The notes under the pieces: model-generated
The model's database searches: none
Seen by the model: only the letters and a program-made list of their open reading frames with translations
Told to the model about the DNA's origin: nothing
IMG/VR virus record: IMGVR_UViG_3300034117_001294
Span: 124,001 to 188,000 of that record
DNA length: 64,000 nt
Strand: one strand, 5' to 3'
Program-made: the position numbers and the translations under genes
Part shown: piece after piece, positions 27,277 through 62,177 of the stretch
How the letters are laid out: each line of letters starts with the position of its first letter
Position numbering within the stretch: the stretch's first letter is position 1

Positions 27277-27800
27277 TGGCATTACAATACATCAACACTG
27301 GAACAAGTGCAAACAAAGGAGACGGTGATAGTCTCCGAGTAGCATTCCACAAAATTAATCAAAACTTTTCACAAGTTCAAAGTTCCAGTACGTCATCTGT
27401 TGTTATCAGCGATAGTGGTGAAGTGCCTGCAATTGAACTACAATCATTTGGTGGCACATTTACCTTACCGGGCGACAACTCTACGGCTGTGCAACTTTTT
27501 GAATTTGATAAAAGAATATATAGAGGTGCTAGCATAGATATTCTAGCAGAGAACCAAACTACTGATACACAGGATTCCGGAAGTAGCTATATGGTAACCT
27601 GGAATAGCACTACCAGTCATGTGTTAGGTACAGGAATTGTGAGCTTATTTGAAAACGGTAGCACCAATAATGCCAACTGGGACATTGTAGATACATCAAT
27701 CTATGACAATCGAGTGAGAGTACAGGCCTATAATGTTTCCGGACTAACTGCTACTAATGTAATTTCTTGGCGTGCTCAAGTAAGTTTGTTTAGGTTATAA
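27276..27800 (+). CDS. baseplate/fibre-connector protein
   Basis: INTGTSANKGDGDSLRVAFHKINQNF (gp9/gp10-like N-terminus). Confidence 0.6.
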   Translation: MALQYINTGTSANKGDGDSLRVAFHKINQNFSQVQSSSTSSVVISDSGEVPAIELQSFGGTFTLPGDNSTAVQLFEFDKRIYRGASIDILAENQTTDTQDSGSSYMVTWNSTTSHVLGTGIVSLFENGSTNNANWDIVDTSIYDNRVRVQAYNVSGLTATNVISWRAQVSLFRL

Positions 27801-27801
27801 T

Positions 27802-30531: not shown

Positions 30532-30534
30532 AAG

Positions 30535-33072
30535 ATGAGCACAATAAGTAATTTACCACCGTTAAACACACTAACCAATGCTGTTCTGATACCAGTAGCG
30601 GATACTTCTACCAGACAAACATACTATGTAACTGTAGAAACATTAGGAACATTTTTTAGTAGAGAAACTGCGGTAGGTGCTAGCGGAGCCACTGGACCGA
30701 TTGGTCTACGAGGTGCCACAGGCAGCGGATCAACTGGTGCTACGGGGCAAGGTGGTTCAACTGGATCTACTGGTCCAAAAGGTGATATTGGCTATCCCGG
30801 AGGAACTGGTGCTACTGGTCCGCAAGGTATCCCAGGTACTGCTGCATTTATGGGTGCAACTGGTGCAACCGGAAGTCAAGGGCCTGCTGGTAGTGCAGGT
30901 GCTACAGGTAGTGCAGGTGCTACTGGTAGCGGTGCTACTGGTTCTACAGGTGCCCAAGGTGCAACCGGTGAACAAGGTGCAACCGGTCTCCAGGGTATTC
31001 CCGGAATAGCAGCATTCCAAGGCGGTACTGGTTCCACTGGTCAACAAGGTATTCCCGGCCAAGGCGGTACAGGTGCAACTGGTGCTCAAGGATCAACAGG
31101 TTCTACAGGACCCCAAGGTGCTACTGGTATTGCTGGAACATTTGCAGGTCAAGGCGGTACGGGTTCAACTGGACCAATTGGTTCAACTGGTGCTACAGGC
31201 GAAGGTGCTACAGGTGCAACAGGGGAAATTGGTCAGCCATTTGTTATTGATGCTGTAGGGTATTGGCCAACTCCGTACGACGAACGAAGTCAATATGATG
31301 ATCGTCCGTTTGGTTTTGCATTTTTAGAACTAGGTACCGGAACATTATACATTAAACAAAACGGAGATGGTAACTGGAGTGCAGGTGCACCATTTGGCGG
31401 TGCAGGTGCAACTGGTGCTACTGGACAAGGAACTACAGGTGCAACTGGTATAGGCAGTCCGGGTGCTACTGGACCAGTTGGCGGAACTGGGGCTACTGGC
31501 AATTTTGGTGCAACTGGTGCTACTGGCATTCAAGGACCGACTGGCGACTTAGGTACAACAGGTGCAACTGGTCCGTTAGGATCAACAGGTGCTACAGGTA
31601 ACTTTGGTGCTACTGGTGCTACCGGACTCCGAGGTGCTACAGGTGCAACTGGTCCGCAAGGATCAACTGGATTAGGTGCTACAGGTGCAACCGGAGCAGA
31701 CGGTGCTACCGGTCCAGACGGTGCTACTGGTTCAACTGGACCAATTGGCGGTGACGGTGCTACCGGTGCAACTGGTATTCAAGGCGAGTTAGGCTCAACT
31801 GGTGCTACAGGCATTGGTTCAACTGGTGCCACAGGTGCTACTGGTAACCAAGGAGAGCCGGGTGCTACAGGTGCTACAGGACAAGGTGCTACAGGTGCAA
31901 CAGGTGCCATTGGAGCAACAGGTGCAACAGGTGCTACTGGATTACAAGGCAGCACAGGTGCAACTGGCCCGTTAGGAACTACAGGTGCAACCGGTGCAAC
32001 CGGTGCTACTGGTCCTGCAGGTGCTACTGGTTCAGAAGGTCCAAGTATACCGGGAACTACAGGTGCGACAGGTGCGACAGGGCCGGCTGGGGCTACCGGA
32101 GCAGTCGGTTTACAAGGCAGTGAAGGAGCATCTGGTGCTACTGGTGCAACTGGTCCTCAAGGCAAATATATTACCACTGCTACATTAACTTCTAGCAATA
32201 CAATAATTGAATTTACATTAAGCGATGCTTCCGTAATAAGTGTTGGTCCAATAACCGGTGCTACTGGTCCTAGTGGGGCTACAGGTGCAACTGGAGCAGA
32301 AGGTGTAATGGGTGCTACTGGTGCTACTGGAATAGGATCAACAGGTGCGACCGGAGCAACTGGTGCAACTGGATCAATGGGAGCAACTGGTCCACAAGGA
32401 GATATCGGACTTCCAGGAAGTACAGGATCAACTGGTTTGTGGGGGTCTACTGGGCCTGCTGGATATGATGGTGCCACAGGTGCCACAGGTGCTCAAGGAT
32501 CATCGGGTGCAACTGGTGCTCAAGGATCAACTGGTGCCACTGGATTAACTGGTGCTACTGGTTCGAGTAATGCACAGGCCGCAGCTTTAGAAATTGTGCC
32601 TTATGCAGGCGGATTTACATACTATGCTAAAGGATATGAAGATAATATTACTGCTACTATTGTTGCAAGAGATGACCTAGGTGATATTAGAGGATCGTTC
32701 TTTAGAGGAACTGCTACTGTTGCAGTGTATGCTGACTTGGCAGAAAAATATCTAACAGACCGAGAATACTCAGTCGGTACTGTGATGACAGTTGGTGGCA
32801 TTGCAGAAGTTACCGCGGTAACAACTAGTGACTGTTATGTTATCGGTGTAGTCTCCGGTAAGCCTGCATATATGATGAATAGTGAATTAGAAGGCGGAAC
32901 ATATATTGCGTTAACTGGTCGTGTACCAGTTAAAGTAGAAGGGTACGTGTTAAAAGGCGAACCTATTTGGCCGTACATGGATGGCAAAGGCAGTACAACT
33001 AGCAATGGCCGACAACCATTTGCATTTGCATTAGAAAACGGTTCAGGCATTGTGGAGTGTTTAGTTAAATGA
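30535..33072 (+). CDS. collagen-like fibre with C-terminal chaperone domain
   Basis: Long Gly-X-Thr repeats; C-terminal YADLAEKY...GRVPVKV. Confidence 0.8.
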
Positions 33073-36017
33073 GTACCATTAGTAATCTACCCGTTATTGG
33101 TTCAATAACAACGGCAACTAGTATGCCTGTTGCTGACGGCAACCTAACTAAACAGATGACTGTAGGGCAGTTAGGCGAATTCATTAATAATGAATTAGTC
33201 ACATTCAATGTGTCAACGGCAACTACTAGCACTATTGGCGGAATTAAAATTGGCGATGGTTTAAATATTGACCAAGAAGGATTTTTAAATGTAACAACTG
33301 TTGCTACTACTGCAACTACTTCTACTCTAGGAACAATTATAGTAGGCGACGGTTTAGAAATTGTTGAAGGTGTAGTCAATGTAGTTTCAATGGGTGCAAC
33401 TGGTGCTCGGGGTGCAACTGGCACTAGAGGATCGACTGGTGCAACTGGTCCTAGACTGACCGCAGTAATTTCAACTTCAAGACCATCGGTGGCAGCGGCT
33501 GGGGACATGTGGCTTGATACTCAAGAAACAGGACAACTGTTTACTTACAACGGTTCTGTTTGGGTATCAGCAAGTCCTGGTGGTGCTGTTGGAGAAACGG
33601 GAGCAACTGGTTCAGTCGGTGCTACGGGTGCAACTGGGTATCAGGGTGCCACCGGTGCTACCGGATTTACTGGCGGGCCAGGTGCTACAGGCTTAACCGG
33701 TGCAACTGGTGCCCAAGGCATTCCTGGCACATTTGCAGGTCAAGGGTCTACTGGTGCAAGCGGATTGCCGGGCGTAGACGGTGCAACTGGTGCAACTGGT
33801 AGTGGTAGCACAGGTGCAACCGGAGTTGGTTTCATTCCTTTGTATTCTCAAACTACTGCAACTATCAGTTTAAACACTGTAACTTTCGTAACTCATTTAT
33901 CGTCTAGTACTGTAGCGTATACAGTAAGTTCTAGAGTAAGGGCTACTGCGGACGCTGATATTTTATCAAACTTTGACGGCATTGTTGAAAGTTTTATTGG
34001 AGATCAGCTCACTATTAGACCGTTAACTAGCTTTGGTGCAGGAACATTCCAAGCATGGACTATAACATTAGTCGGCGGACAAGGTGCTAGAGGTTCTACA
34101 GGACCGGATGGTGCTACCGGAGCAACGGGTATTGGATCTACTGGTGCTACCGGTGCTACTGGACCTCAAGGTGCTACTGGTGCAGGTGCTACAGGTGCTC
34201 AGGGAGAAATTGGATCTACTGGTGCTACCGGTGCTACTGGACTTCAAGGGGCAACAGGTAGTGGTAGTACAGGTGCTACAGGAAATATTGGATCAACTGG
34301 TGCTACAGGTGCTACAGGTGCAACTGGGCCAGTTGGTTCAACAGGTGCTACAGGTGCTACAGGTGCTACTGGTCCTCAAGGTGCTACTGGGCCCCAAGGC
34401 ATTCCTGGAACGTTTGCAGGTCAAGGAGCAACAGGTGCTCAGGGAGAAATTGGATCTACTGGTGCAACTGGATTGCAAGGCGGCACAGGTTCTACTGGAC
34501 CTCAAGGATCTGAAGGAAATATTGGTGCTACTGGTGCTCAGGGATCAACTGGTGCAACCGGAGCAGGTGCAACTGGAGCGACAGGTGCTATTGGAGCAAC
34601 AGGTGCTACTGGTGCTACTGGTCCAGCAGGTGCTACAGGATCTGGTGCTACAGGTGCAACCGGTGCACAGGGTGCTACAGGCCCACAGGGACAAAACGGT
34701 GCCACCGGTCAAGGTGCTTCAGGTTCAACTGGACCGCAAGGTGATCAAGGATCAACAGGAGCAACCGGATTAACAGGTTCAACTGGTCTGGGTGCCACAG
34801 GTTCAACTGGTGCAACTGGATTCATCGGTGCTACAGGTGCCGTTGGTGAGTTCGGTAGTACAGGTGCTACAGGTATTCAAGGCACTACCGGAGCGTTTGG
34901 AGCAACAGGTGCTACAGGACCGACTGGAACTAGAGGATCAACAGGGGCTACTGGCCCAGCAGGTGCTACTGGTAGTGGTTCTACCGGTGCTACAGGTGCA
35001 GCCGGACAGTTTGGGTCTACTGGGGCTACAGGGCAATGGGGATCTACTGGTGCTACTGGTCTATGGGGATCTACTGGTGCCACTGGTCCAACAGGATCAA
35101 CTGGACCTGGATACCTACAACTAATTTCTACATCAACTACCTTAGTTATAACTACCAGTACTTCGACTTTTGTATTTCAAGTTGATAAAGCATACGGAAC
35201 TAATGCGTATACAACATCAACTCGTGTTCGTGCAGTGGCATTTACCAGTACTGCATTTAGCACAGTTATTGACGGCTACGTTGAATGGTATACTGGCACT
35301 AATATAGGTATTGCTCCATATACCATTAACGGGCCGGGAACATTTAAAGATTGGTCTATTAGTCTTACTGGTGCAAGAGGATTTCAAGGATTTACAGGTG
35401 CCACTGGTCCTGCTGGTGCAACAGGTGCAATTGCAAATCCATTAAGTAGCGTCTTTACAATTACAAATACTACCAGTGCAACTTCAACAAACTCTGGTGC
35501 TCTACAAGTTGTAGGTGGTGCTGGCATTGGCGGAAACTTACATGTTGGCGGAAATATTTCAGTCAATAATAGTCAGGCTGTAAACGGCCCTGCATTCTCA
35601 GTTTATCCAGACTCGGGAGTAACGCAGACAATTACTTCTGGAACACAACAAAAAGTGTTGTTCCAACTTGAAGATTTTGACACTAATGGAAATTTTGCCA
35701 GTTCAAGATTTACGCCCACTGTTGCAGGTTATTATCAACTAAATGCCGCAGTTCGCATAAGCGGTACTATGGGTACTGGTGAAAGCATGTTAGTTATTTG
35801 GAAAAATGGATCAGAGTATAAGCGTGGTTGGAATGCAAGTGGCACAGAAGTAGGTGCTAGTTTCTTTAGCATGGGCGTAAGCACTATAGCTTATGCTAAC
35901 GGAACTGGAGATTATTTTGAAGTCTATATTCAACAGACTAGCGGCAGCAGTAAAGATATTACCGTTGCTGGCGGAAACATTACATGGTTTAACGGCTGCA
36001 TGATGCGTGGTGCGTAA
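33069..36017 (+). CDS. collagen-like fibre with C1q-like head
   Basis: GAT/GST repeats; C-terminal PAFSVY...KVLFQ.EDFDT...[10 protein letters not shown]. Confidence 0.8.
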
Positions 36018-51203: not shown

Positions 51204-51704
51204 ATGTTGACAATTATAAAAAATCCAGACCCAATATTGGCTGAAAGAATGCCAGAATTTGATTTTGAAAATCCACTAACCGATCCTGTTCAACTTGAAA
51301 AAGACATGATTGAAGCTATGCTTGCCAATGGCGGCATTGGATTATCTGCTAATCAAATAGGTGTTAGAACTCGTATGTTTGTTATGGGACATCAGAAATA
51401 TCGAGATCATGCACAGGCATTTTTCAATCCAATCATTGCGAGAGTAACAGACGACTTGCTCGAAGAAGAGGAAGGATGCTTGAGTTTTCCCAACATTTAT
51501 GCTAAAATAAAAAGACCAAGAGGAATTCTTGTTAGGTTTCAAAACTCAAAAGGTGAGACCCAAGAAGCTGAATTTTTTGGTTACGAGTGTCGATGCTTTT
51601 TACATGAATTTGATCATCTAGAAGGAATCACATTTCAAAATAGAACAAGTGCTCTCAAGTGGGCGTTGGCAGTAAAGAAATCAATCAAAAGGAAATACAA
51701 ATAA
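51204..51704 (+). CDS. def: peptide deformylase
   Basis: GIGLSANQIG, EEGCLS, HEFDHLEGI. Confidence 0.95.
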   Translation: MLTIIKNPDPILAERMPEFDFENPLTDPVQLEKDMIEAMLANGGIGLSANQIGVRTRMFVMGHQKYRDHAQAFFNPIIARVTDDLLEEEEGCLSFPNIYAKIKRPRGILVRFQNSKGETQEAEFFGYECRCFLHEFDHLEGITFQNRTSALKWALAVKKSIKRKYK

Positions 51705-53974
51705 TGCTGGAACCAAATAACGATCTCGAAGGAATGTTTGAACGTGCGATCGAAGTTGCCGCTAAACATAAACATGAGTATATCACGCTGGAACATTTTT
51801 TGTACAGTATGATAACTGATGAAAACTTCAAAGGGATGCTAAAAGATTTTGGTGCCGAAGTTGAGTTGTTAAAGAAGAGTCTCGAAAAGTTTATTCGAGA
51901 TGATCTTAACGATATTAAAACTGACAAAGAAAATTATCGTCCAAAGAAAACAAACACTGTAGAGCGTATGTTGAATCGTGCTTTTACACAAGTGTTGTTT
52001 AGCGGCCGTACAGTAATTGAACCAATTGACTGCTTTATTAGTATTTTTAGTGAAAAGAAGAGCTTTGCTAACTTCTTTCTACGCAAGGCTAAAATTGATA
52101 AAGACAAGTTTATTGAATTTCTACATAACAGTGCGTTAAACGAAGACGGTGAGGCTAGCGAAGTAGGTAGCAATCAACTAGAAAAAATGATTGTTCAATA
52201 CTGTGCAAACTTAACTAATAGGGTCAAGCAGAAAAAGATTGATCCTGTTATCGGTCGTGAGAAAGAAATTGAAGAAATTCAACTTGCACTAGCACGCCGT
52301 CAAAAATCAAATGTTATGTTGATCGGCGACCCAGGTGTAGGTAAAACTGCTATTGCAGAGGGCCTTGCTCGCAAGATTGAAGAAGGCAAGGTTCCTAAGT
52401 TTATTCAAGGTCATACTGTTTACAGTCTAGATATCAGTGCATTACTAGCAGGCAGTAAGTATCGTGGCGACTTTGAAGAACGCTTAAAGATGGTTATTAC
52501 TGCACTTGAAAAGAAAAAGAACTGTATCTTGTTCATCGACGAAGCACATATGATGAACGGTGCTGGATCAGCAAGTGGCGGATCTAATGACATGGCAAAT
52601 ATGTTGAAACCAGCATTAGGTAAAGGTACTATCAAAGTTGTGGCATCGACTACATGGGAAGAATTCCGTAAGCACTTTGAAAAGGATCGTGCCCTGATGC
52701 GTCGATTCCAACGTGTTGTAGTTAACGAGCCAGATGAAGCTACTGCTATTAAAATCCTTAAAGGTCTTAAGAAGTACTATGAACAGCATCACGGTGTTAA
52801 GATCACTAATCAGGCAGTTATTGACAGCGTAAAATATTCTATCAAGTATATGACTGATAAGAAGCTGCCAGATAAAGCAATTGACCTAATTGACTGTGCA
52901 TGTGCTAGATTCAAAGTCAGAGACGAAGAAGCAGGCATTGTTGATCACGATGAAATTTTATTTGAAGTGTCAAAGTTAACTGGCTTACCTTTAGATCAAA
53001 TTGCACAAAAAGAAAACAAGAATCTTAAAGACCTTGACAAGAACATGCGTAACAAAGTGTTTGGTCAGGAAACTGCAATTGAAATATTGTTAGATAAAAT
53101 CTTTATTGCACAAGCAGGTTTAAAGAGCTTAAACAAACCAGTAGGTAGTTTCCTATTTACAGGACCAACCGGTGTAGGTAAGACTGAAACTGCAAAAGTA
53201 TTGGCTGCAAGTATGGGAGTAGAACTAGTTCGCTTTGATATGAGTGAATTCCAAGAGAAACACTCAATTGCTAAGTTTATTGGTGCTCCCCCCGGCTATA
53301 TTGGATTTGAAGACAATGCAGGTATGTTGATTACCAAACTGCAAGAGCATCCAACTGCTATTTTACTGTTTGATGAAATTGAGAAAGCTCATCCTGATGT
53401 TGCTAACTTACTACTACAAATGATGGACAATGGTTATGTTACTGGATCTAATGGTAAGAAGGCTGATGGTCGAAATGCCATTCTTATCCTTACTAGTAAT
53501 TTAGGTGCTGCCGATAACGATCGTAATGCAGTTGGATTTAGTAGTTTAGAAAGAGGTGACGAAACTGATGGTGCAATTAACAGTTTCTTTAAACCAGAAT
53601 TCCGCAATCGATTAGACGGTATTATCAAGTTTGGTAAACTAGATCACAATACCATGGCTAAGATTGTCAAGAAGTTTATTGACGAACTAAACAGTTTGTT
53701 GAAAGATAAGAATGTTGCTGTTAAGTTAACTGCTGACGCTGCCGAATTGTTAATCAAGAAAGGATTTAATCGTAAGATGGGTGCTCGTCCACTACAACGT
53801 ACAATTGATGATATGATTAAGAAGCCGCTGAGTAAGGAAATTTTATTTGGTCGGTTAGTAAACGGTGGAGTTGTTGAAGTAGGTGCTAACAGTAATGATC
53901 TTACCTTAACTTATCCTGAAATTTTACCCGTAGTAGAAAATGTTGAAATTGATAAAGCGACAGAAAGTCGATAA
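51704..53974 (+). CDS. clpA: ClpA-type AAA+ unfoldase
   Basis: N-domain HEYITLEH, two Walker A motifs (GDPGVGKT, GPTGVGKT), FIDEAH, RFDMSE, VGF ClpP-docking loop, GARPL; ATG at 51704. Confidence 0.9.
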   Translation: MLEPNNDLEGMFERAIEVAAKHKHEYITLEHFLYSMITDENFKGMLKDFGAEVELLKKSLEKFIRDDLNDIKTDKENYRPKKTNTVERMLNRAFTQVLFSGRTVIEPIDCFISIFSEKKSFANFFLRKAKIDKDKFIEFLHNSALNEDGEASEVGSNQLEKMIVQYCANLTNRVKQKKIDPVIGREKEIEEIQLALARRQKSNVMLIGDPGVGKTAIAEGLARKIEEGKVPKFIQGHTVYSLDISALLAGSKYRGDFEERLKMVITALEKKKNCILFIDEAHMMNGAGSASGGSNDMANMLKPALGKGTIKVVASTTWEEFRKHFEKDRALMRRFQRVVVNEPDEATAIKILKGLKKYYEQHHGVKITNQAVIDSVKYSIKYMTDKKLPDKAIDLIDCACARFKVRDEEAGIVDHDEILFEVSKLTGLPLDQIAQKENKNLKDLDKNMRNKVFGQETAIEILLDKIFIAQAGLKSLNKPVGSFLFTGPTGVGKTETAKVLAASMGVELVRFDMSEFQEKHSIAKFIGAPPGYIGFEDNAGMLITKLQEHPTAILLFDEIEKAHPDVANLLLQMMDNGYVTGSNGKKADGRNAILILTSNLGAADNDRNAVGFSSLERGDETDGAINSFFKPEFRNRLDGIIKFGKLDHNTMAKIVKKFIDELNSLLKDKNVAVKLTADAAELLIKKGFNRKMGARPLQRTIDDMIKKPLSKEILFGRLVNGGVVEVGANSNDLTLTYPEILPVVENVEIDKATESR

Positions 53975-55541: not shown

Positions 55542-58500
55542 ATGAATTTAAATGAGCTGTTTAGTAACAAAAAGAAAGTTGTGTCAGAAGGTGGAAATTT
55601 ATCGCTACCTGGCGGGCACGATGCACAGCAAATCGATCTTAAAGTGCATAATCGTTCCTACATTGTACCAATTTTAGATACACTGTTGATTAATATCAAC
55701 AGTTCTTTTGCAAAAAAATACAAAAAACCTTTGTGGAATCCGCAACTACTACAGAGTAAACAATTTCTAAGTGGAAGTAGTCTACACTTCTTTAATACCA
55801 AAGGTATTACTGACCAACAATTTGTAGAAAAGAAACCAAAAGTAGGCGACATTGACACACAGGTCAACAAAGAAAACGAACAAGAATTAGAACAATGGTT
55901 ATCTGCTAGTCAAGGTAAGATGGTAGGCAATGCCAAGTTCTTAGGTTTCCAAAGAGGCAACGAACAATTCTCCAGTTTATGGGAGCTACAAGACCCACCT
56001 ATTAAAGTGCAAATTGACTTAGAATTTGTAGAGTTTGACAAAGACGAACCCACTCCATGGAGCAAATTTAGTCATAGCAGCAGCTGGGATGATCTAAACG
56101 CAGGAGTTAAGGGTGTATTCCACAAGTTTTTAATTCAAAGTCTAGCATCATTAAGTAGAAAAGATTTCTTACTACGCAAAGCTGTAGGACGAGGCAAGGC
56201 CAAAGAAATACAAGATGTTCCTACAACTGATAACATGGTCAGCTTTGCAGTATCCAGTAAAGAAGGCGGCGGCCTACGTGCCAAATACGAACCAGTATTA
56301 GATGCAAACGGACAGCCTTTAATTAGTAACGGTATGCCAGTTATGCAGGCATTACCAGCAACTGGTTACGAACAAGACATTGGAAAGATTTTTGGATCTA
56401 TCTTTGGTTCGAGATTAAATCCTAAACAAGCTGCACAATTAGAAAGCAAGTACTGGAGCTTTACTGGTTTAGTTGATGCAATGAATACGCTAGTAACTCC
56501 AGAAGAAAAGCAGTCAGTGTTGTCTGCATTTATTGACAAAATATTTGGCAAGGGTGCCCAAGGTCTTTACAAAGGCGATCCAGAGCGTGATAGTGCAGAA
56601 AAATCTGCTGCATTGGATTTAATGATCAATAAATTAGGAGTTCAGACACCTAGTGATCTTGAACAGATGAAGCAGCAATACAAGGCATCGTACAGAGTTA
56701 CTGCTGAAAGTTTGCAAGAAGCAGAAGTTAAAGCACAGTTCCGTAAGAACATGCCACACCTACGTGATCTAAAGCCTATTGACTTTTTAGATCTATTGGA
56801 CGAGATTCACGATGGTAATGGTAATTTTAAATTACAAAACATTCCGTTAAATGTTAAGATTGACGGATTTGGCGGACGTTTTGGTAAGGATGCAGAAGGC
56901 AAGCCTTTTATGGCTACCAGCAATACTCCTCCAAGATATAAAGCAGGATTTGTACAATATCATCAAGACAAGGGCACAACTGATCCTGAAATTTTAGGTC
57001 GTGCAGAAAAGTTTGATGAACTGTTTAATGAAATGATGAACGCTATCAAATTGGTTGATAGCAAGCTAGGTGCAGACTTTCTTGTTAATAAACAGGTCAC
57101 CTGTGAAGTATTGTTCTTGCCGTTTGCAGCCGAAACGTCAGAGGGCAAATTAAAATTTGTAGGAATTCAATACGATAAGTTTCCTCCAGGTGTAGAATTA
57201 GTTCTTGTGCCGTTCCGTGTAGTAGATGCTAGTTCCGGAGAAGATGTACCTGATGCTAACGATGTTGTTACAAGTCTAAGCAAATTAGGCGGACAAGGAA
57301 GTGTTAGATTCCTTAGTAATAGTCTAGTACAAAAAGACGGACTTGATGTTACTGAGATTATTAATCCTTTAGATAATATCGAAGAACTAAAACAAATTGT
57401 ATCTGACACAGCAGGCAAAAGAGATCGTGCCAGTTTGCAACTAAGACGCGAAGTAGAAGAAAAATTAATGCCTGTTAAGATTGCACTGGAAAAGGCAATT
57501 GATGCAGATCCTAACATTATTGGCAAAGATATATTAGGTCAAGACTACGAAGGTATTGTTATCAACAGTCGTCTTGGCCCTATCAAAGTTACTAGCCAAC
57601 AACAAAAAGATATTATTACCCAAAAGAACGCTGCCAAAGCTGCCGCTCGTGCAGAACAGCCGCGTGGTGAAAACAAAACTGCGGTAGTTGCTATCGGTAG
57701 CTTTGTGGGACACAAAGGTCATCAACAGCTATTTGGTCTTACAATTAATAAGGCAAAAGAAGTCAGCGGCGATCCTTATCTGTTTATGGGCAGTGCAGTA
57801 GGTGCAGACGATCCTATTCCAGTTGCTGACAAAATTAAAACTTGGAAACAATTGTATCCCGAGTATGCAGGCAATATCAGTGCTGTAACACAAGAGGGCG
57901 GATCTTTGATGCAAAAGATCAAGCACGAGTTAATCAACCCGTTGCCAGGCAAGCCACCACGCTACGATAATGTTATTATTATGGTAGGTGAAGATCAGGC
58001 CAAGATGCCTATCGCACAGGCCCTAATGAAGGCAGTTAATAAGTTTCCTGGATACGAGCATGTTAAGGTACAATTAGAAGTTACTCCTAGAGGAACTGGC
58101 ATGAGCTTTACTAAGCTACGTAACGTGTTAAAAACTGGAGATGAGCAACAAGCATTCCAAATGTGGAATGATGCATTCAATGGCGGCCAGGATGGAGCAA
58201 AACCATTACCGTCACAATGGATTAAACATTTAATGGATGTGTCAAAGACCGGAATGAGCACACCTCAACCAAAGCCAGCAGTTAAGAAGCCTGCTGTACT
58301 ACCTACTCCGCAGACTGTTCAACAACCTGCACTAGGTGAAATGAGATTGTTTAATGCACTAATGAGTCCTAAAAAAATTGTAAATGAAAAGACTATTGAA
58401 GAACGTAAACGTAAAAAAAGTAAAGGTGCAGCATGGGGTCCAGGGCCATATGGTTGGTACGGATTTGATGCAGGTTATAGTGGTAACGGTGGAGATGGTG

Positions 58501-60350
58501 GTAGTGATGGTGGTGAGAGCATGAATCAAGAAAACTTTGCTGATAGTCGTAATCCACAAGACAACAGCAACAGTAAACGGCAAATGTTAAAAATTGCATC
58601 ATTAAACAATATTAAAGATGTGAACAAAATTAATGCAGGGCAGATGTTAAAATTGCCTAACGGCACAACTTATAAAGTAATGCCTGGAGATACCCTGTCT
58701 ACAATTGCGGCAAGACAAGTGAAAGATCAATCTTCTCCAATGCCCCAACCCTCAGTTAAACAAGGTCCAAACTCTAACATAGATCAAACGACAAGAGATA
58801 AAGCACAGGCATTTGTTGGTCAACAAAAACCAGAAATGGGTGGTGGCAGGGGGGTCGTTAATCCAGCAACCGTCCGGCCCGACGAACCAACCCAAACCGG
58901 AGTTCGAAGTGGTCCTAACACAAACATAGATCAACCAGCAAGAGATAGGGCCAAAGCGGCTGTTACTAAAATTTCTAGTGAAGACGATATCATGAATATG
59001 GTTAAAGATCATGAAGGTGTAAAAAATAAACCATACCAAGATACAAAAGGATTATGGACTGTAGGAGTAGGTCACTTAATTGGTGATGGCAAGACTCTCC
59101 CTTCAGAGTGGAAAAGAACATTTTCAGACGCAGAAATAATGAATCTGTTTAAAAAGGATTATCAGCATCATAAACAGGCAGCAGAAAAAATTCCTGGATT
59201 TAGTAATTTAAACATGAACGGACAGGCTGCTCTAATTGATCTAACATTTAACATGGGTCCAAGATGGTGGAAGGCTTGGCCTAATTTTACAAAAGCCATG
59301 CAAGCAGGAAACATAGATCAAGCAGCAAATGCATTAAAAAATAGTGCATGGTATTCACAAGTTGGTAGAAGAGCACCTAAAATTGTATCTCTTTTACAGA
59401 GCGGAGATCGATCTGTAGCAGAAAACTTTGCGGATGGACGTAATCCACAAGACAAGGGCGACAGTAAACGTCACGGCGTTCCTACAAAATCGTCAGTGAG
59501 CAATCTACGTAAAGTAGCTAAACAAGGCGGCCGTAAAGGACAATTAGCACATTGGATGGCAAATATGAAAGCAGGTAAAGCAAAAGCTAAGAATGAAGAC
59601 TTCAACGGCGAATACGACGACGAAGCAGGAATGGCACAGAGTAATCTACGCACAATGGCTCGTGCAGTTGATGGTTTATTAAAAACTATTAAGAGCAACG
59701 ATAACTTGCCAGAATGGGGACAAGAAAAGATTGCCAAAGCAGAAATGATGTTGGTCAGTGTCTGGGATTATTTGTTAAGCCAAAAAGAAATGGGCATGGA
59801 TCCTAAGATCAACGAAAGCAAGGCTGTAGAAAGTTTAAGACAGATTGTCGCAGAGTTGTCCAATGAAAAATTAGGACAATATAAAAAGGCCGCCGGTGAT
59901 CAAGCAACTGCCGCAGACAAAGCGGGCGACTATGCTAAGGGTCATAAACGTTTCAAAGGAATTGTTAAAGCAACTAACAAGCAGTTTGATAATGATGCTA
60001 AAAAGCATAGAGAGCAAGGTATGGCGGAGGCTGGCAGCAATGCTATAGATACTGTATCTAAACGCTTAACTGATCCTAAAGATGGAATGACAGCCAAACT
60101 TAGAGCAGCTGGTGATAAGAAACGCGATAGTCAGTACATGGGCACACAGATTGCTAAGAATGATCGAACCAGTAAAGACGAATGGGGCAACTTAAAAGAA
60201 AAGATTAAAGGTGCAGACGGCAAAGCCTGTTGGAAAGGTTATAAGTACGCAGGTACTAAGAACGGTAAAGACAAGTGTGTGCCAATTGGCGAAGCCTACG
60301 AACTTGAAATGACCCTGGCTATTCTAAAGCTGTTTGAAAGTAATAAATGA
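55542..60350 (+). CDS. 1602-aa multidomain polyprotein: pol-beta-like NTase, ligase-like adenylation domain, HxGH nucleotidyltransferase, LysM, GH24 lysozyme, short head-protein modules
   Basis: GSS..VGDID; KIDG/CEVLF/EGIVI/IKV; GHKGH...VGEDQ...MSFTKLR; LysM YKVMPGDTLSTIA; HEGVKNKPYQDTKGLWT (E-x8-D-x5-T). Confidence 0.7.
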   Translation: MNLNELFSNKKKVVSEGGNLSLPGGHDAQQIDLKVHNRSYIVPILDTLLININSSFAKKYKKPLWNPQLLQSKQFLSGSSLHFFNTKGITDQQFVEKKPKVGDIDTQVNKENEQELEQWLSASQGKMVGNAKFLGFQRGNEQFSSLWELQDPPIKVQIDLEFVEFDKDEPTPWSKFSHSSSWDDLNAGVKGVFHKFLIQSLASLSRKDFLLRKAVGRGKAKEIQDVPTTDNMVSFAVSSKEGGGLRAKYEPVLDANGQPLISNGMPVMQALPATGYEQDIGKIFGSIFGSRLNPKQAAQLESKYWSFTGLVDAMNTLVTPEEKQSVLSAFIDKIFGKGAQGLYKGDPERDSAEKSAALDLMINKLGVQTPSDLEQMKQQYKASYRVTAESLQEAEVKAQFRKNMPHLRDLKPIDFLDLLDEIHDGNGNFKLQNIPLNVKIDGFGGRFGKDAEGKPFMATSNTPPRYKAGFVQYHQDKGTTDPEILGRAEKFDELFNEMMNAIKLVDSKLGADFLVNKQVTCEVLFLPFAAETSEGKLKFVGIQYDKFPPGVELVLVPFRVVDASSGEDVPDANDVVTSLSKLGGQGSVRFLSNSLVQKDGLDVTEIINPLDNIEELKQIVSDTAGKRDRASLQLRREVEEKLMPVKIALEKAIDADPNIIGKDILGQDYEGIVINSRLGPIKVTSQQQKDIITQKNAAKAAARAEQPRGENKTAVVAIGSFVGHKGHQQLFGLTINKAKEVSGDPYLFMGSAVGADDPIPVADKIKTWKQLYPEYAGNISAVTQEGGSLMQKIKHELINPLPGKPPRYDNVIIMVGEDQAKMPIAQALMKAVNKFPGYEHVKVQLEVTPRGTGMSFTKLRNVLKTGDEQQAFQMWNDAFNGGQDGAKPLPSQWIKHLMDVSKTGMSTPQPKPAVKKPAVLPTPQTVQQPALGEMRLFNALMSPKKIVNEKTIEERKRKKSKGAAWGPGPYGWYGFDAGYSGNGGDGGSDGGESMNQENFADSRNPQDNSNSKRQMLKIASLNNIKDVNKINAGQMLKLPNGTTYKVMPGDTLSTIAARQVKDQSSPMPQPSVKQGPNSNIDQTTRDKAQAFVGQQKPEMGGGRGVVNPATVRPDEPTQTGVRSGPNTNIDQPARDRAKAAVTKISSEDDIMNMVKDHEGVKNKPYQDTKGLWTVGVGHLIGDGKTLPSEWKRTFSDAEIMNLFKKDYQHHKQAAEKIPGFSNLNMNGQAALIDLTFNMGPRWWKAWPNFTKAMQAGNIDQAANALKNSAWYSQVGRRAPKIVSLLQSGDRSVAENFADGRNPQDKGDSKRHGVPTKSSVSNLRKVAKQGGRKGQLAHWMANMKAGKAKAKNEDFNGEYDDEAGMAQSNLRTMARAVDGLLKTIKSNDNLPEWGQEKIAKAEMMLVSVWDYLLSQKEMGMDPKINESKAVESLRQIVAELSNEKLGQYKKAAGDQATAADKAGDYAKGHKRFKGIVKATNKQFDNDAKKHREQGMAEAGSNAIDTVSKRLTDPKDGMTAKLRAAGDKKRDSQYMGTQIAKNDRTSKDEWGNLKEKIKGADGKACWKGYKYAGTKNGKDKCVPIGEAYELEMTLAILKLFESNK
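58530..59473 (+). repeat. 53-bp direct repeat pair (58530-58582 and 59421-59473)
   Basis: 46/53 identical by hand alignment; both encode ENFAD(S/G)RNPQD..(N/D)SKR. Confidence 0.85.
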
Positions 60351-60621: not shown

Positions 60622-60993
60622 ATGAGAGCAAAAGAATTCATCGCTGAAAGAAAAGAAGGTAAGATAACAAAACGTCAGCAACAATCTACTAGGGGTCTGC
60701 ATCGTTATTCAGACGCCGAAAAAGCAGATAGCGGTTATGTTAGCTTTAGAGTAGGCATGGCCGCAGCTATGAGCGATGGAAAAAATAAATTAGACATCGA
60801 TTCAAAGAGTTGGGCAGGAAAGAAAAAGACTGCACATCCTTACACTCAAGTGGAAGCAGACATGCTCAAAGCAGCATACAAAGCTGCCGGTGCCAGTTAT
60901 GAAGATATGAATCACGGCGATATGGATAGTTGCGAGTTAGACTCGACTAATATATACGGGCCTGTACCAGATAGAAAGAAACTAACAAAATGA
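60622..60993 (+). CDS. putative internal head protein with T4 CTS-like N-terminus
   Basis: MRAKEFIAE versus T4 capsid-targeting sequence MKTYQEFIAE; TAAATA upstream. Confidence 0.6.
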   Translation: MRAKEFIAERKEGKITKRQQQSTRGLHRYSDAEKADSGYVSFRVGMAAAMSDGKNKLDIDSKSWAGKKKTAHPYTQVEADMLKAAYKAAGASYEDMNHGDMDSCELDSTNIYGPVPDRKKLTK

Positions 60994-62177
60994 GAATTAA
61001 ACAACTTTTAGAATCAGCAACTACTGGAGGCACAAGCTCAGCATCAGTAGCAACAGTTGCAAAAGGCAGTAAGGGAATGATTAAACGTCAGAAACCTACT
61101 GACAATGCATTGGATAGTGGAAAGTTGTTTCAAGAAACTAACGCTGCGGAAGGCAAGGAAGATAAGATTGCTCAACTAAAGAAAGACCATGACACCGCAG
61201 TGCATTGGAGCAAGAATGAAACAAGCCCACAAAAGCGTGAGGCTGCTCGTCAAAAGGCTGAAAAGATCAAGCGTCACTTAGATACACAATACAAGCAAGG
61301 TGTGGCGGAGGTTAGTGATGCTACGCTAACCAGTTATCTAACAAAATTAGATAAAGATAATCTTAAACACAGAATGGATCCCACAAAACGCAGTGACACA
61401 AAACGCATGAAAAGTGGTCCTAATTTTGTTAAAGCGTTTACCAAATTGGATAATAAAAAGCAAGGTGTGGCGGAGGCCACAGGTGACGAAAAATTTGATA
61501 AATCAATGAGAAAAATGACTGGAAAAATTACTCCAGGCGATGCTGACGAGATGTGGCCGACACAAGAATTTGAACCAGTTGATCTTGATCCATCATACTT
61601 GCCAAGTATGGAAAAATACAAGGCAAAATTATTTCCATTGGCTTACCAATACTGGACTGACGGCGACAATGCAGATGAATTAAGAGCATTAGGATGGGAA
61701 CCCGATTATGGCGACGACTATGTTATGGTGGTGCTGTCTGGCATCGGACACGACGGTCACATTCAATACGACAAATATGATTTTGATGCTGAAGATGAAA
61801 ACAATGAAGGTGTGGCGGAGGTAGCACCGCCGGGAGCCAAAGCCGAACGCATGGTCAAGCATATTAAAAAGGGATATGCTAAAGATGGTAAGTTAACTAA
61901 AACTGAAAAAAGCAAGGCATACGGTGCTGCATGGAAAGCACACAATGCCGGCAAAGTAGAAGAACAAAGTGTAGAAGAAAACAAGAAAGGTGTACGTGCT
62001 GTGAAACATGCAGTTAAGCCTAGAAACTTTGTTGCCAAGAACGCAGTACAAAGTGGTGCAGGTGCTCACAAAGATAAAAAGAAAGCACAAAAGCAAGGTG
62101 ATGTAAAACACAAGGCTAAAGAGCCAGCTTACGAATCTAAGCTATGGGCAGCATTAGATCGAAGAATTATCAAGTAA
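60990..62177 (+). CDS. modular putative internal head polyprotein
   Basis: MRIKQLLES start; modules separated by (Q/E)GVAE. Confidence 0.6.
   Translation: MRIKQLLESATTGGTSSASVATVAKGSKGMIKRQKPTDNALDSGKLFQETNAAEGKEDKIAQLKKDHDTAVHWSKNETSPQKREAARQKAEKIKRHLDTQYKQGVAEVSDATLTSYLTKLDKDNLKHRMDPTKRSDTKRMKSGPNFVKAFTKLDNKKQGVAEATGDEKFDKSMRKMTGKITPGDADEMWPTQEFEPVDLDPSYLPSMEKYKAKLFPLAYQYWTDGDNADELRALGWEPDYGDDYVMVVLSGIGHDGHIQYDKYDFDAEDENNEGVAEVAPPGAKAERMVKHIKKGYAKDGKLTKTEKSKAYGAAWKAHNAGKVEEQSVEENKKGVRAVKHAVKPRNFVAKNAVQSGAGAHKDKKKAQKQGDVKHKAKEPAYESKLWAALDRRIIK

What the first reader, a model, noticed from the sequence alone, without database searches (positions are those of the whole stretch)
58530..59473. 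LysM-lysozyme cassette inserted in frame between 53-bp direct repeats
Seen: the repeats (46/53 identical) are 891 bp apart (297 codons). The first copy breaks off into LysM, while the second continues as the intact motif ...DSKRHGVPTK. A second internal duplication (GPN(S/T)NIDQ..RD(K/R)A, ~58763 and ~58911) lies in the linker. Inference: the muramidase was acquired by recombination at a head-protein motif and can be excised cleanly, making it an optional cargo module.
Basis: partly seen in the sequence, partly recalled or inferred. Interest (0 to 1): 0.7.

Follow-up and report, generated by a model that had tools for sequence, protein, structure and literature searches.

The report
Swappable lysozyme cassette in phage protein
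A cell-wall-cutting enzyme module sits in frame inside a giant protein of an uncultured lake jumbo phage, and the short repeats on either side of it have carried the same module between different genes and phages, which shows how such phages swap protein parts without breaking the reading frame.

Summary
Two direct repeats (58529-58582 and 59420-59473) match at 47 of 54 nt and lie 891 nt apart, in frame, in a 1602-aa ORF. They flank a permuted LysM, a disordered linker with a 49-codon tandem duplication, and an intact T4-type (GH24) lysozyme.

The module is optional. Syntenic orthologues exist with exactly this interval missing, and only 4 of the 120 best orthologues carry it.

The same unit (left stump, cassette, right repeat) also occurs in a non-orthologous gene of a phage whose backbone is only 76-80% identical. 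There the core differs at 2 of about 860 nt, and the other differences cluster in the repeats. This points to homologous exchange through the repeats.

The repeat belongs to a roughly 56-aa basic "NFADG" module:
- It occurs in at least 1445 protein clusters and matches no Pfam or PHROG family.
- It is single copy in 3 of 3 complete genomes.
- It always follows Glu, with V/L/I/M at P3, which fits the T4 prohead-protease motif.

Not shown:
- Clean excision. The left copy is a decayed stump, and eight lake runs gave no deletion junction.
- Packaging in the head, cleavage by the protease, and any role in cell entry. These are inferred.

Verdict: a new variant of motif-mediated modular shuffling, operating at the level of protein domains.

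The parts
55542..60350 (+). Host gene: 1602-aa multi-module protein. It has a constant N-terminal part of about 925 aa and a variable C-terminal chain of modules.
   Evidence: ORF. One search found 769 homologues, with the N-terminal part 60-92% identical and the C-terminal part variable. Gene order around it is conserved in L085-L090. Sliding-window identity shows the gene is a recombinational mosaic.
55542..55589 (+). N-terminal leader MNLNELFSNKKKVVSE, loosely like a T4 capsid-targeting sequence and ending in V-S-E.
   Evidence: Sequence. Annotated internal virion and head proteins of phage JD18 start MKTYQEFLNE and MKTYKEFITE. Clearer look-alikes start other ORFs of this genome. The assigned function is inference.
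58335..58388 (+). RLFNAL linker that ends the constant part. It is bounded by Glu-ended sites (LGE before it, VNE after it).
   Evidence: In 95 orthologues the constant part ends ..PVAE, followed by RL(F/S)xAL..xxE and then unrelated modules. Coordinates.
58389..58529 (+). Gly/aromatic-rich 'GPGPYG' module. In many unrelated proteins it lies directly before an intact NFADG module.
   Evidence: It is also present in the empty alleles P0004, P0006, P0111 and P0015.
58530..58582 (+). R1: left repeat, a 17-codon stump of the NFADG module with decayed residues (S6, N12, S13, N14).
   Evidence: The corresponding positions G6, K12, G13 and D14 are invariant in 150/150 intact modules. The junction DNA is identical in L088 and L128.
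58557..58730 (+). Circularly permuted LysM-like domain (helix, strand, strand, helix). Its first helix includes the tail of R1.
   Evidence: Pfam LysM matches only the second half of the profile, at aa 1017-1039. The first-half motif YKVMPGDTL..IA follows it. The canonical order is seen in P0099. The AlphaFold2 model has pLDDT 82-92 for model residues 10-67. The same arrangement occurs in an unrelated protein in L099/L100.
58744..58964 (+). Disordered linker with a tandem 49-codon duplication carrying the GPNxNIDQ..RD.A motif.
   Evidence: Repeat family D1. pLDDT is below 50 for model residues 68-141. The same motif follows each canonical LysM in P0099.
58977..59405 (+). T4-type (GH24) lysozyme domain. 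Its catalytic residues are E1158 (59013-59015), D1167 and T1173.
   Evidence: Pfam PF00959, E = 1.1e-15. It aligns to the JD18 lysozyme at 30% identity, E = 8e-21. E and T are invariant and D nearly invariant in 54 sequences. pLDDT is 96-98. Foldseek matches T4 lysozyme with TM 0.72-0.75.
59412..59423 (+). S-V-A-E: a separator and presumed prohead-protease site at the end of the cassette. Cleavage would fall between E1294 and N1295.
   Evidence: E precedes the NFADG module in 150/150 proteins, and P3 is V/L/I/M in 126/150. The T4 gp21 motif is L/I-X-E (PMC9026906). Cleavage itself was not tested.
59421..59473 (+). R2: right repeat, the start of the intact NFADG module.
59424..59597 (+). Intact NFADG module: about 56-58 aa, pI 10.8, extremely conserved.
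   Evidence: 33 invariant columns. pI. No Pfam, PHROG or PDB family matches. It is single copy in G001-G003.
59598..60347 (+). Further C-terminal modules, including a Q-G-M-A-E separator at 60015-60029.
   Evidence: G[VM]AE occurs 86 times in the variable parts of orthologues and never in the constant parts.

Best explanation
The interval is an optional, in-frame cargo cassette: a permuted LysM, a disordered linker and an active-looking T4-type lysozyme. It is lodged inside the phage's single copy of a very conserved basic 56-aa 'NFADG' module. That module sits within a 1602-aa multi-module protein of an uncultured lake jumbo phage related to the T4 superfamily.

The left repeat is a 17-codon decaying stump of the module, and the right repeat is the start of the intact module.

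I infer that the unit was made once. A lysozyme module that already ended in ..SVAE|NFADG.. (the arrangement seen in P0003) was joined by one illegitimate crossover to the interior of another phage's NFADG module, after ..SKR. The right side was resolved by homology.

Since then the unit (stump, cassette, intact module) has spread by homologous recombination within its two arms during co-infection. It has entered different backbones and even a different host gene.

The functional model is inferred. The host protein would be carried into the prohead by its N-terminal leader. The T4-type (Peptidase_S77) prohead protease would cut after (V/L/I/M)-x-Glu at the module separators. The roughly 32-kDa lysozyme piece would then be packaged and ejected with the DNA, binding and cutting peptidoglycan during entry.

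Shown here: the repeats, the presence/absence polymorphism, the shared junction, the transfer pattern, the domain identities, the separator statistics and the presence of the protease gene. Inferred: packaging, cleavage, ejection, the role in entry, and how the unit was first formed.
For: Repeats and reading frame.

Exact empty alleles in syntenic genes: P0004, P0006 and P0111. The cassette is present in only 4 of 120 orthologues.

The same junction DNA occurs in the window, in L088 (P0001) and in L128 (P0121). P0121 is a 472-aa DUF6321 protein found on three independent contigs. Its backbone is 76-80% identical to the window's genome, but the unit is 98.1% identical. The core 58570-59431 has 2 mismatches. 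The other mismatches lie in R1 (3) and in the right arm (16 between 59432 and 59591).

In P0018 the cassette is flanked by a different duplicated linker, and in P0003 it lacks R1.

Seven of 150 NFADG proteins show the same architecture around other cargos: a partial left copy, a cargo and a full right copy. The truncation points differ and the stump residues are decayed.

NFADG module: 1445 clusters; E at P1 in 150/150; V/L/I/M at P3 in 126/150; C-terminal in 121/150; 71 of 130 carrier proteins start with MRAxEF..E-type leaders.

G[VM]AE occurs 86 times in variable regions and 0 times in constant regions, against a shuffle mean of 1.8. The same left-hand context is joined to many different right-hand contexts.

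Peptidase_S77 is encoded in G007, which carries a 100% identical copy of this gene, and in G001-G003 and G006.

The lysozyme looks intact, and dN/dS for the cassette is 0.30.

The T4 cleavage motif L/I-X-E, the 10-residue capsid-targeting sequence, and processing of Alt at both termini are described in PMC9026906.
Against: There is no proteomic or biochemical evidence that this protein is in the virion or is cleaved.

The window's own record (65% complete) shows no protease, major capsid or portal match.

The leader of this particular protein (MNLNELFS..VSE) resembles the T4-type leader less than those of neighbouring ORFs do.

The residue at P3 before R1 in the window is Asn (M-N-Q-E), so the left end of the cassette may not be cut there.

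Across phages, NFADG-coding DNA is only about 78% identical, with a median longest identical run of 15 nt. The arms can therefore serve only close relatives or very short homologies.

The origin by one illegitimate plus one homologous crossover is a reconstruction, not an observation.
Confidence: 0.7

Rival explanations
1. The cassette is ancestral at this site, and the empty alleles are excision products made by recombination between the two direct repeats. On this view loss, not gain, is the main process.
For: Direct repeats flanking a dispensable segment allow deletion. T4-type phages recombine on homology patches shorter than 50 bp and excise cassettes between flanking repeats (PMC2839356). 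Most orthologues lack the cassette.
Against: The empty alleles carry fully canonical motifs with none of the R1-specific substitutions. GPGPYG followed directly by NFADG is a common arrangement in unrelated proteins, so the uninterrupted state looks original. The longest identical run between R1 and R2 is 17 nt, and only a crossover in the first 12-nt run would give a canonical module. No 891-nt deletion joint appeared in eight runs. The cassette also sits in other contexts with other flanks.
Confidence: 0.12
2. The lysozyme is the phage's ordinary lysis enzyme or a tail-associated lysin, and the host protein is not a capsid-internal, protease-processed protein. On this view the Glu-ended motifs are only linkers.
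For: It is the only PF00959 match in the 229-kb record. The nearest named relatives of the domain are cyanophage endolysins at 40-46% identity, and T4 gp5-type tail lysozymes also match. LysM plus GH24 is a common endolysin layout.
Against: Most orthologues and all three complete related genomes lack any PF00959 gene, so lysis in this group does not depend on it. The domain is embedded 1150 residues into a 1602-aa protein. The separators match the specificity of the S77 protease that these phages encode. NFADG-carrying proteins commonly start with T4-type capsid-targeting-like leaders.
Confidence: 0.12
3. The repeats and the cassette's contexts are artefacts of metagenome assembly, that is, chimeric joins at a conserved motif.
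For: The NFADG motif is shared by many co-occurring phages. Many foreign contigs pile up on it, with loose ends at 58530, 58564, 59421 and 59476.
Against: Contigs with no differences span both repeats and the cassette in six independent runs. Three further IMG/VR records carry the interval. P0121 was recovered on three contigs from different samples and sources. The repeats are only 87% identical over 54 nt, shorter than a read, so reads bridge them.
Confidence: 0.03

Closest known systems
T4 internal proteins (IPI-III) and Alt: capsid-targeting sequence plus gp21 processing
   Same: Both have an N-terminal leader of the M-(K/R)-x-x-x-E-F-(I/L)-x-E type. These phages encode a gp21-type Peptidase_S77. 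The presumed cuts follow (L/I/V/M)-x-Glu. In both systems the cargos are highly variable behind a conserved targeting element (PMC3012670, PMC9026906, PMC12373910). Alt is also trimmed at both ends.
   Different: Here many modules are chained in one polyprotein-like ORF. A conserved 56-aa basic module usually sits at the C-terminus. The cargo is exchanged in frame inside a gene rather than as whole genes. Packaging is not demonstrated.
PeSL-mediated modular shuffling in T4-type phages (Arbiol et al. 2010, PMC2839356; Comeau et al. 2014, PMC4122927) and the repeat-flanked IP loci of T-even phages
   Same: Short conserved repeats flank optional cassettes and act as homologous recombination sites. 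One copy is left at empty sites. Patches of homology under 50 bp suffice.
   Different: PeSLs are intergenic promoter and stem-loop elements that move whole genes. Here the repeats are coding sequence for a protein module and move a protein domain in frame. The interval shows no enrichment of promoters or terminators.
Virion-associated peptidoglycan hydrolases (the T4 gp5 lysozyme domain; 'internal virion lysozyme motif' phrog_2083)
   Same: Both have the GH24 T4-lysozyme fold with the Glu/Asp/Thr residues, embedded in a large structural or ejected protein.
   Different: This domain is not part of a baseplate hub. It is preceded by a permuted LysM and is optional among orthologues.
Processed head and ejection proteins of giant phages (phiKZ, 201phi2-1, SPN3US)
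   Same: In these jumbo phages many head proteins are cut after Glu by a gp21 homologue, with several sites per protein (PMC5694885, PMC9026906).
   Different: Their motif is S/A/G-x-E or A-x-E, whereas here P3 is mainly Val/Leu/Ile/Met. Neither the NFADG module nor in-frame cassette exchange has been described for them.
LysM-GH24 endolysins
   Same: The domain pair is the same, and lysozyme identity to metagenomic LysM-GH24 and GH24 proteins is 44-78%.
   Different: The LysM is circularly permuted. The pair is internal to a 1602-aa protein and flanked by protease-type separators.

Membership tests
GH24 / Phage_lysozyme (PF00959) | Profile match above the curated cut-off | tested here: met
   58.5 bits against a cut-off of 22.3, at aa 1155-1279.
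GH24 / Phage_lysozyme (PF00959) | Catalytic Glu, Asp and Thr equivalent to T4 lysozyme E11, D20 and T26 | tested here: met
   E1158, D1167 and T1173 align with the IDEG, KDTEG and WTIG motifs of the JD18 lysozyme. E and T are invariant and D is at least 90% conserved in 54 sequences. The T4 residue numbering is from memory.
GH24 / Phage_lysozyme (PF00959) | T4-lysozyme fold | tested here: met
   pLDDT is 96-98. Foldseek matches many T4 lysozyme entries with TM 0.72-0.75 and rmsd 2.3-2.8.
GH24 / Phage_lysozyme (PF00959) | Muramidase activity | not testable with these tools
   Needs an enzyme assay.
LysM (PF01476) | Full beta-alpha-alpha-beta domain in the canonical order | tested here: not met
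   The Pfam match covers only profile positions 22-43 (28.9 bits, cut-off 20.9). The first-half motif follows the second half. The model is helix-strand-strand-helix. The domain works like a circular permutant of LysM but is not a canonical member.
T4-type internal head protein (IP/Alt-like) | N-terminal capsid-targeting leader ending in (L/I)-x-E | tested here: inconclusive
   The host protein starts MNLNELFS..VVSE. Clearer matches (MRAKEFIAE, MRAREFLLRE, MRAHEFINE) start other ORFs of this genome. Reference leaders were taken from JD18.
T4-type internal head protein (IP/Alt-like) | The phage encodes a gp21-type prohead protease (Peptidase_S77) | tested here: met
   No match in the window's own incomplete record. 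The protease is present in G007, which carries a 100% identical copy of this gene.
T4-type internal head protein (IP/Alt-like) | Protein is present in the capsid, cleaved at the motif and injected | not testable with these tools
   Only the motif statistics bear on this.
PeSL-type mobile cassette | Flanking repeats are intergenic promoter plus stem-loop elements | tested here: not met
   The repeats are coding and in frame. Promoter-like and terminator-like sites occur at the level expected from shuffles.
PeSL-type mobile cassette | Cassette present or absent between conserved flanking repeats, with a single repeat at empty sites | tested here: met
Homing-endonuclease, intein or transposon insertion | A mobility enzyme, or splicing or terminal motifs, inside the insert | tested here: not met
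   The insert holds only the LysM-like domain, the linker and the lysozyme. The ORFs on the opposite strand are short and have no matches.

The most novel reading that the evidence does not exclude
The single-copy NFADG module may be a capsid-delivered basic peptide that has to be made as a cleavable fusion behind a leader-bearing protein. Its very conserved coding sequence would also act as the docking site of a protein-level 'cargo integron'. Any module recombined in frame just upstream of it, or into it, would automatically be packaged, cut out by the prohead protease and injected. Lake jumbo phages would then trade injected enzymes such as lysozyme, VanY-type peptidase and others through this one site.
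Probability: 0.3. Interest if true: 0.8.

Novelty: new variant of a known kind. Interest (0 to 1): 0.62.

Why it matters
Modular exchange in phages is usually described for whole genes flanked by intergenic linkers. Here the linkers are coding sequence, so whole protein domains are swapped in frame. One exchange is caught almost in the act, with 2 differences in about 860 nt between backbones that are only 76-80% identical.

The analysis also exposes an undescribed and extraordinarily conserved peptide module. It occurs in at least 1445 protein clusters and is absent from Pfam, PHROGs, the PDB and 50,697 GenBank phage records. It also reveals a G-V-A-E separator grammar. Both give direct, testable handles on what uncultured jumbo phages package and inject.

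If the packaging model holds, the module and its separators could be used to predict injected proteins from sequence alone.

Tried and rejected
1. Megablast of the gene against GenBank phages found no match. No cultured close relative exists there.

2. Searches for Peptidase_S77, Gp23 and Portal_T4 in the window's own record found nothing. A protein search with a relative's protease also found nothing. The record is only 65% complete and the Pfam controls did not ring, so these results are uninformative. The question was settled indirectly through G007.

3. The NFADG module gave only sub-threshold noise against Pfam, PHROGs and the PDB, no match in GenBank phages, and no match in the literature.

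4. I tested whether BLAST HSP boundaries in the variable regions coincide with (V/I/L/M/F)-x-E. The enrichment was only twofold (122 observed, 59 expected) because HSP ends are fuzzy. I replaced this with the much cleaner G[VM]AE count.

5. A deletion-junction search in eight runs found no 891-nt joint. One 975-nt joint had a 21-nt side and was found at 85% likeness, so it most likely comes from a relative that carries only the motif. These runs are held as contigs, so rare variants cannot be seen.

6. AlphaFold2 on the NFADG module alone gave low to moderate confidence (mean pLDDT 64, a small helical hairpin), and I drew no functional conclusion from it.

7. I considered that the first LysM half had been truncated by the insertion. 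I rejected this because the same permuted arrangement occurs in P0003 and P0018, which lack the stump, and in an unrelated protein.

8. I considered many NFADG landing sites per genome. I rejected this because each of three complete genomes has exactly one copy.
Full report
**What is in the sequence**

The window is part of a 228,849-bp IMG/VR virus record estimated 65% complete, which implies a jumbo phage of roughly 350 kb. It occurs in many lake-water metagenomes.

The finding lies in one ORF, 55542-60350 (+), encoding 1602 aa. The two direct repeats are at 58529-58582 and 59420-59473. They match at 47/54 nt and start 891 nt apart, in frame. Codon shuffles of the ORF never gave more than 35/54 matches.

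Copy 1 encodes ENFADSRNPQDNSNSKR and runs straight into a LysM-like sequence. Copy 2 encodes ENFADGRNPQDKGDSKR and continues HGVPTK...

Between the copies lie three elements:
- A LysM-like domain that matches only the second half of the Pfam profile.
- A linker with a 49-codon tandem duplication.
- A Phage_lysozyme domain.

Contigs with no differences span the whole interval in six independent runs, and three other IMG/VR records carry it, so it is not an assembly artefact.

**The cassette's domains**

The AlphaFold2 model built from 54 aligned sequences has three parts:
- A confident helix-strand-strand-helix unit (pLDDT 82-92).
- A disordered stretch that holds the GPN.. duplication.
- A lysozyme domain (pLDDT 96-98) that Foldseek matches to T4 lysozyme with TM 0.72-0.75.

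E1158, D1167 and T1173 align with the catalytic residues of a T4-type lysozyme from phage JD18 and are invariant or nearly so among homologues. dN/dS between the window's cassette and that of P0003 is 0.30. The enzyme therefore looks functional.

The LysM is a circular permutant. The segment LNNIKDVNKINAGQMLKLP corresponds to the second half of the canonical LysM of orthologue P0099. The following YKVMPGDTLSTIAA corresponds to its first half. The same order occurs in P0003 and P0018 and in an unrelated protein. The insertion therefore did not create it.

**Presence or absence among orthologues**

The N-terminal part of about 925 aa has hundreds of homologues at 60-92% identity, in conserved gene order. 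Only 4 of the 120 best carry the lysozyme.

- P0004, P0006 and P0111 equal the window protein minus exactly the 297 codons. The upstream GPGPYG module runs directly into a single canonical motif.
- P0005 and P0007-P0013 have the motif straight after the RLFNAL linker.
- P0001 has the cassette with both repeats and the same junction DNA, but a different upstream context.
- P0003 and P0018 have the cassette without the left repeat. In P0018 it is instead flanked by a duplicated RLFNAL linker.
- P0099 carries a VanY-type peptidase with two canonical LysM domains in the same slot.

**Evidence for movement through the repeats**

P0121 is a 472-aa protein recovered on three contigs from different samples. 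It has a different N-terminal part (DUF6321), followed by the same stump, the same junction, the same cassette and an intact module at its C-terminus.

Its contig is 76-78% identical to a distant region of the window's genome (10.3-13.2 kb). The DUF6321 part is 80% identical to a gene at 72.5 kb. The unit itself is 98.1% identical to window 58528-59596.

Within the unit the core 58570-59431 has two mismatches. Three mismatches lie in R1 and sixteen in the right arm between 59432 and 59591. A near-identical core with older arms is what a double crossover inside the arms would produce.

The host gene itself is a mosaic of segments whose closest relative changes along its length. Recombination among these phages is therefore frequent.

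**Direction of the event**

In 150 intact modules, positions G6, K12, G13 and D14 are invariant. The stump departs from them:
- The window's stump has S, N, S and N at these positions.
- The P0001 stump has R6, H7 and S9.
- The P0121 stump has S6.

The stump is thus a relic under relaxed constraint. The empty alleles carry canonical motifs, and GPGPYG followed directly by NFADG is common in unrelated proteins. The uninterrupted state therefore looks ancestral.

R1 and R2 share identical runs of only 12, 17 and 10 nt. Only a crossover in the first run would restore a canonical module. Excision is possible but would usually leave a damaged module, and no deletion joint was seen. Contigs cannot reveal rare variants, so this negative result is weak.

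**What the repeat is**

The right repeat begins a module of about 56 aa (59424-59597, pI 10.8). Its properties are as follows:
- It is found in at least 1445 clusters at 50% identity, 628 of them at E <= 1e-10.
- It typically shares 80-98% amino-acid identity with other copies, and 33 columns are invariant.
- Among the best 150 proteins it is C-terminal in 121. It is preceded by Glu in all 150, with V/L/I/M at P3 in 126. Of the 130 carrier proteins that start with Met, 71 begin with leaders such as MRAKEFIVE.
- It has no Pfam, PHROG or PDB family, is absent from 50,697 GenBank phage records, and did not turn up in the literature.
- Three of three complete genomes hold exactly one copy, each on a different protein (1416, 752 and 432 aa).
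- Third-codon-position identity among copies is about 51% while amino-acid identity is 92%, so the constraint acts on the protein.
- Seven of the 150 proteins repeat the architecture found here, with a decayed partial left copy, another cargo and a full right copy. The truncation points range from 9 to 17 residues.

The window's case is thus one instance of a recurrent process.

**Why a head-protein, protease-processed model**

Annotated internal virion and head proteins of the T4-like phage JD18 start MKTYQEFLNE and MKTYKEFITE. Several ORFs of this genome start MRAKEFIAE, MRAREFLLRE or MRAHEFINE.

The T4 prohead protease gp21 cuts after L/I-X-E. The first ten residues of IPIII target proteins to the capsid, and Alt is processed at both ends (PMC9026906). 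A Peptidase_S77 gene is present in G007, which carries a 100% identical copy of this gene, and in G001-G003 and G006.

In orthologues the constant part ends ..PVAE, followed by RL(F/S)xAL..xxE and then unrelated modules.

The tetrapeptide G[VM]AE occurs 86 times (84 distinct contexts) in 36.5 kaa of variable regions and never in 86.7 kaa of constant regions. The shuffle mean is 1.8. The same left-hand context is joined to many different right-hand contexts. The neighbouring 395-aa ORF (60990-62177) has three such sites.

These are the marks of a chain of modules separated by protease sites. Packaging and cleavage themselves remain untested.

**Function**

None of the three complete related genomes has a PF00959 gene, and the window's record has only this one. 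The cassette is therefore an accessory and not the group's lysis enzyme.

The most likely role is an ejected or virion-borne muramidase that helps entry through peptidoglycan. The permuted LysM would act as the wall-binding part. A role in lysis or in the tail cannot be excluded.

**Comparison with what is known**

The closest mechanism is PeSL-mediated modular shuffling and the repeat-flanked IP loci of T4-type phages (PMC2839356). The difference is that here the repeats are coding and the exchange is in frame at domain level. No promoter or terminator signal is present.

The closest functional analogues are T4 IPs and Alt, and the processed ejection proteins of giant phages.

I rate the finding a new variant of a known kind. 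The NFADG module and the GVAE grammar are its most novel by-products.

Noticed in passing
window 59424-59597; loci L009-L081; proteins P0237-P0386: A basic 'NFADG' module of about 56 aa is 80-98% identical across at least 1445 protein clusters. It is usually C-terminal, always follows Glu, is single copy in three complete genomes, and is unknown to Pfam, PHROGs, the PDB and GenBank phages.
   Followed up: yes
window 60015-60029, window 60990-62177, and the C-terminal regions of P0001-P0120: The tetrapeptide G-(V/M)-A-E acts as a module separator. It occurs 86 times in variable regions and never in constant regions, and joins left-hand and right-hand contexts combinatorially. The neighbouring 395-aa ORF has three such sites.
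   Followed up: yes
window 60622-60993; G000 13420, 64697 and 72549: Several ORFs start with leaders like the T4 capsid-targeting sequence (MRAKEFIAE, MRAREFLLRE, MRAREFLKE, MRAHEFINE). This suggests a family of packaged proteins scattered over the genome.
   Followed up: partly
window 58557-58730; L099 and L100: The LysM-like domain is circularly permuted, with the second half before the first half, and is predicted with confidence as helix-strand-strand-helix. The same form occurs in an unrelated phage protein.
   Followed up: partly
window 58389-58529; L030, L037, L039, L040, L047, L059, L067, L081: A basic, then Gly/aromatic-rich, then acidic 'GPGPYG' module often sits directly before the NFADG module in unrelated proteins. 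Its function is unknown.
   Followed up: no
window 57696-57722 (aa 719-727) and aa 1-925: The constant N-terminal part holds a GSFVGHKGH motif that resembles the HxGH signature of cytidylyltransferase-type nucleotidyltransferases. Pfam gives only a weak FAD_syn hit (E = 0.008). The ESM Atlas nearest clusters are DUF6267 / CTP_transf_like phage proteins. Residues 1-384 have 27-31% identical homologues in Vibrio and Campylobacter phages; Xanthomonas phages match a longer stretch (aa 37-593, 26-28%); Stenotrophomonas phages are also among the 39 matching records.
   Followed up: partly
P0099 (orthologue, no locus fetched): One orthologue carries a VanY-type D-Ala-D-Ala carboxypeptidase with two canonical LysM domains in the same slot. 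Each LysM is followed by the same GPN..TR..A..FV motif that is duplicated in the window's linker. This is an alternative wall-hydrolase cargo.
   Followed up: partly
window 55542-60350 compared with L085, L087, L088, L089 and L005: The host gene is a recombinational mosaic. Its nearest relative switches along the gene: for example 96-98% to L088 at the 5' end, 59-84% in the middle, and 94-99% again from the cassette onward.
   Followed up: yes
window 58563-58571: The window's stump differs from the P0121 and P0001 stumps by three substitutions within 5 nt (AACAGCAAC against AAAGGCGAC), which creates a CAACAG repeat. The 860-nt core has only two changes, so a single multi-base event seems likely.
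   Followed up: no
window 51659-53974: A 771-aa ClpB/ClpA-like double-AAA 'ATP-dependent protease' (phrog_4871, E = 4e-244) lies three genes upstream and keeps that position in all orthologous loci.
   Followed up: no
window 20791-36017: A run of very large tail-fibre-like genes (2161, 909, 845 and 982 aa); three of the four match tail-fibre PHROG families, two of them with collagen-like repeats, and the 909-aa one has no PHROG match.
   Followed up: no
L091 (Klebsiella phage JD18, 2498-4624): In this T4-like phage the lysozyme gene lies directly upstream of three internal-protein genes. A lysozyme next to internal-protein genes is thus an old neighbourhood that could favour fusions.
   Followed up: no
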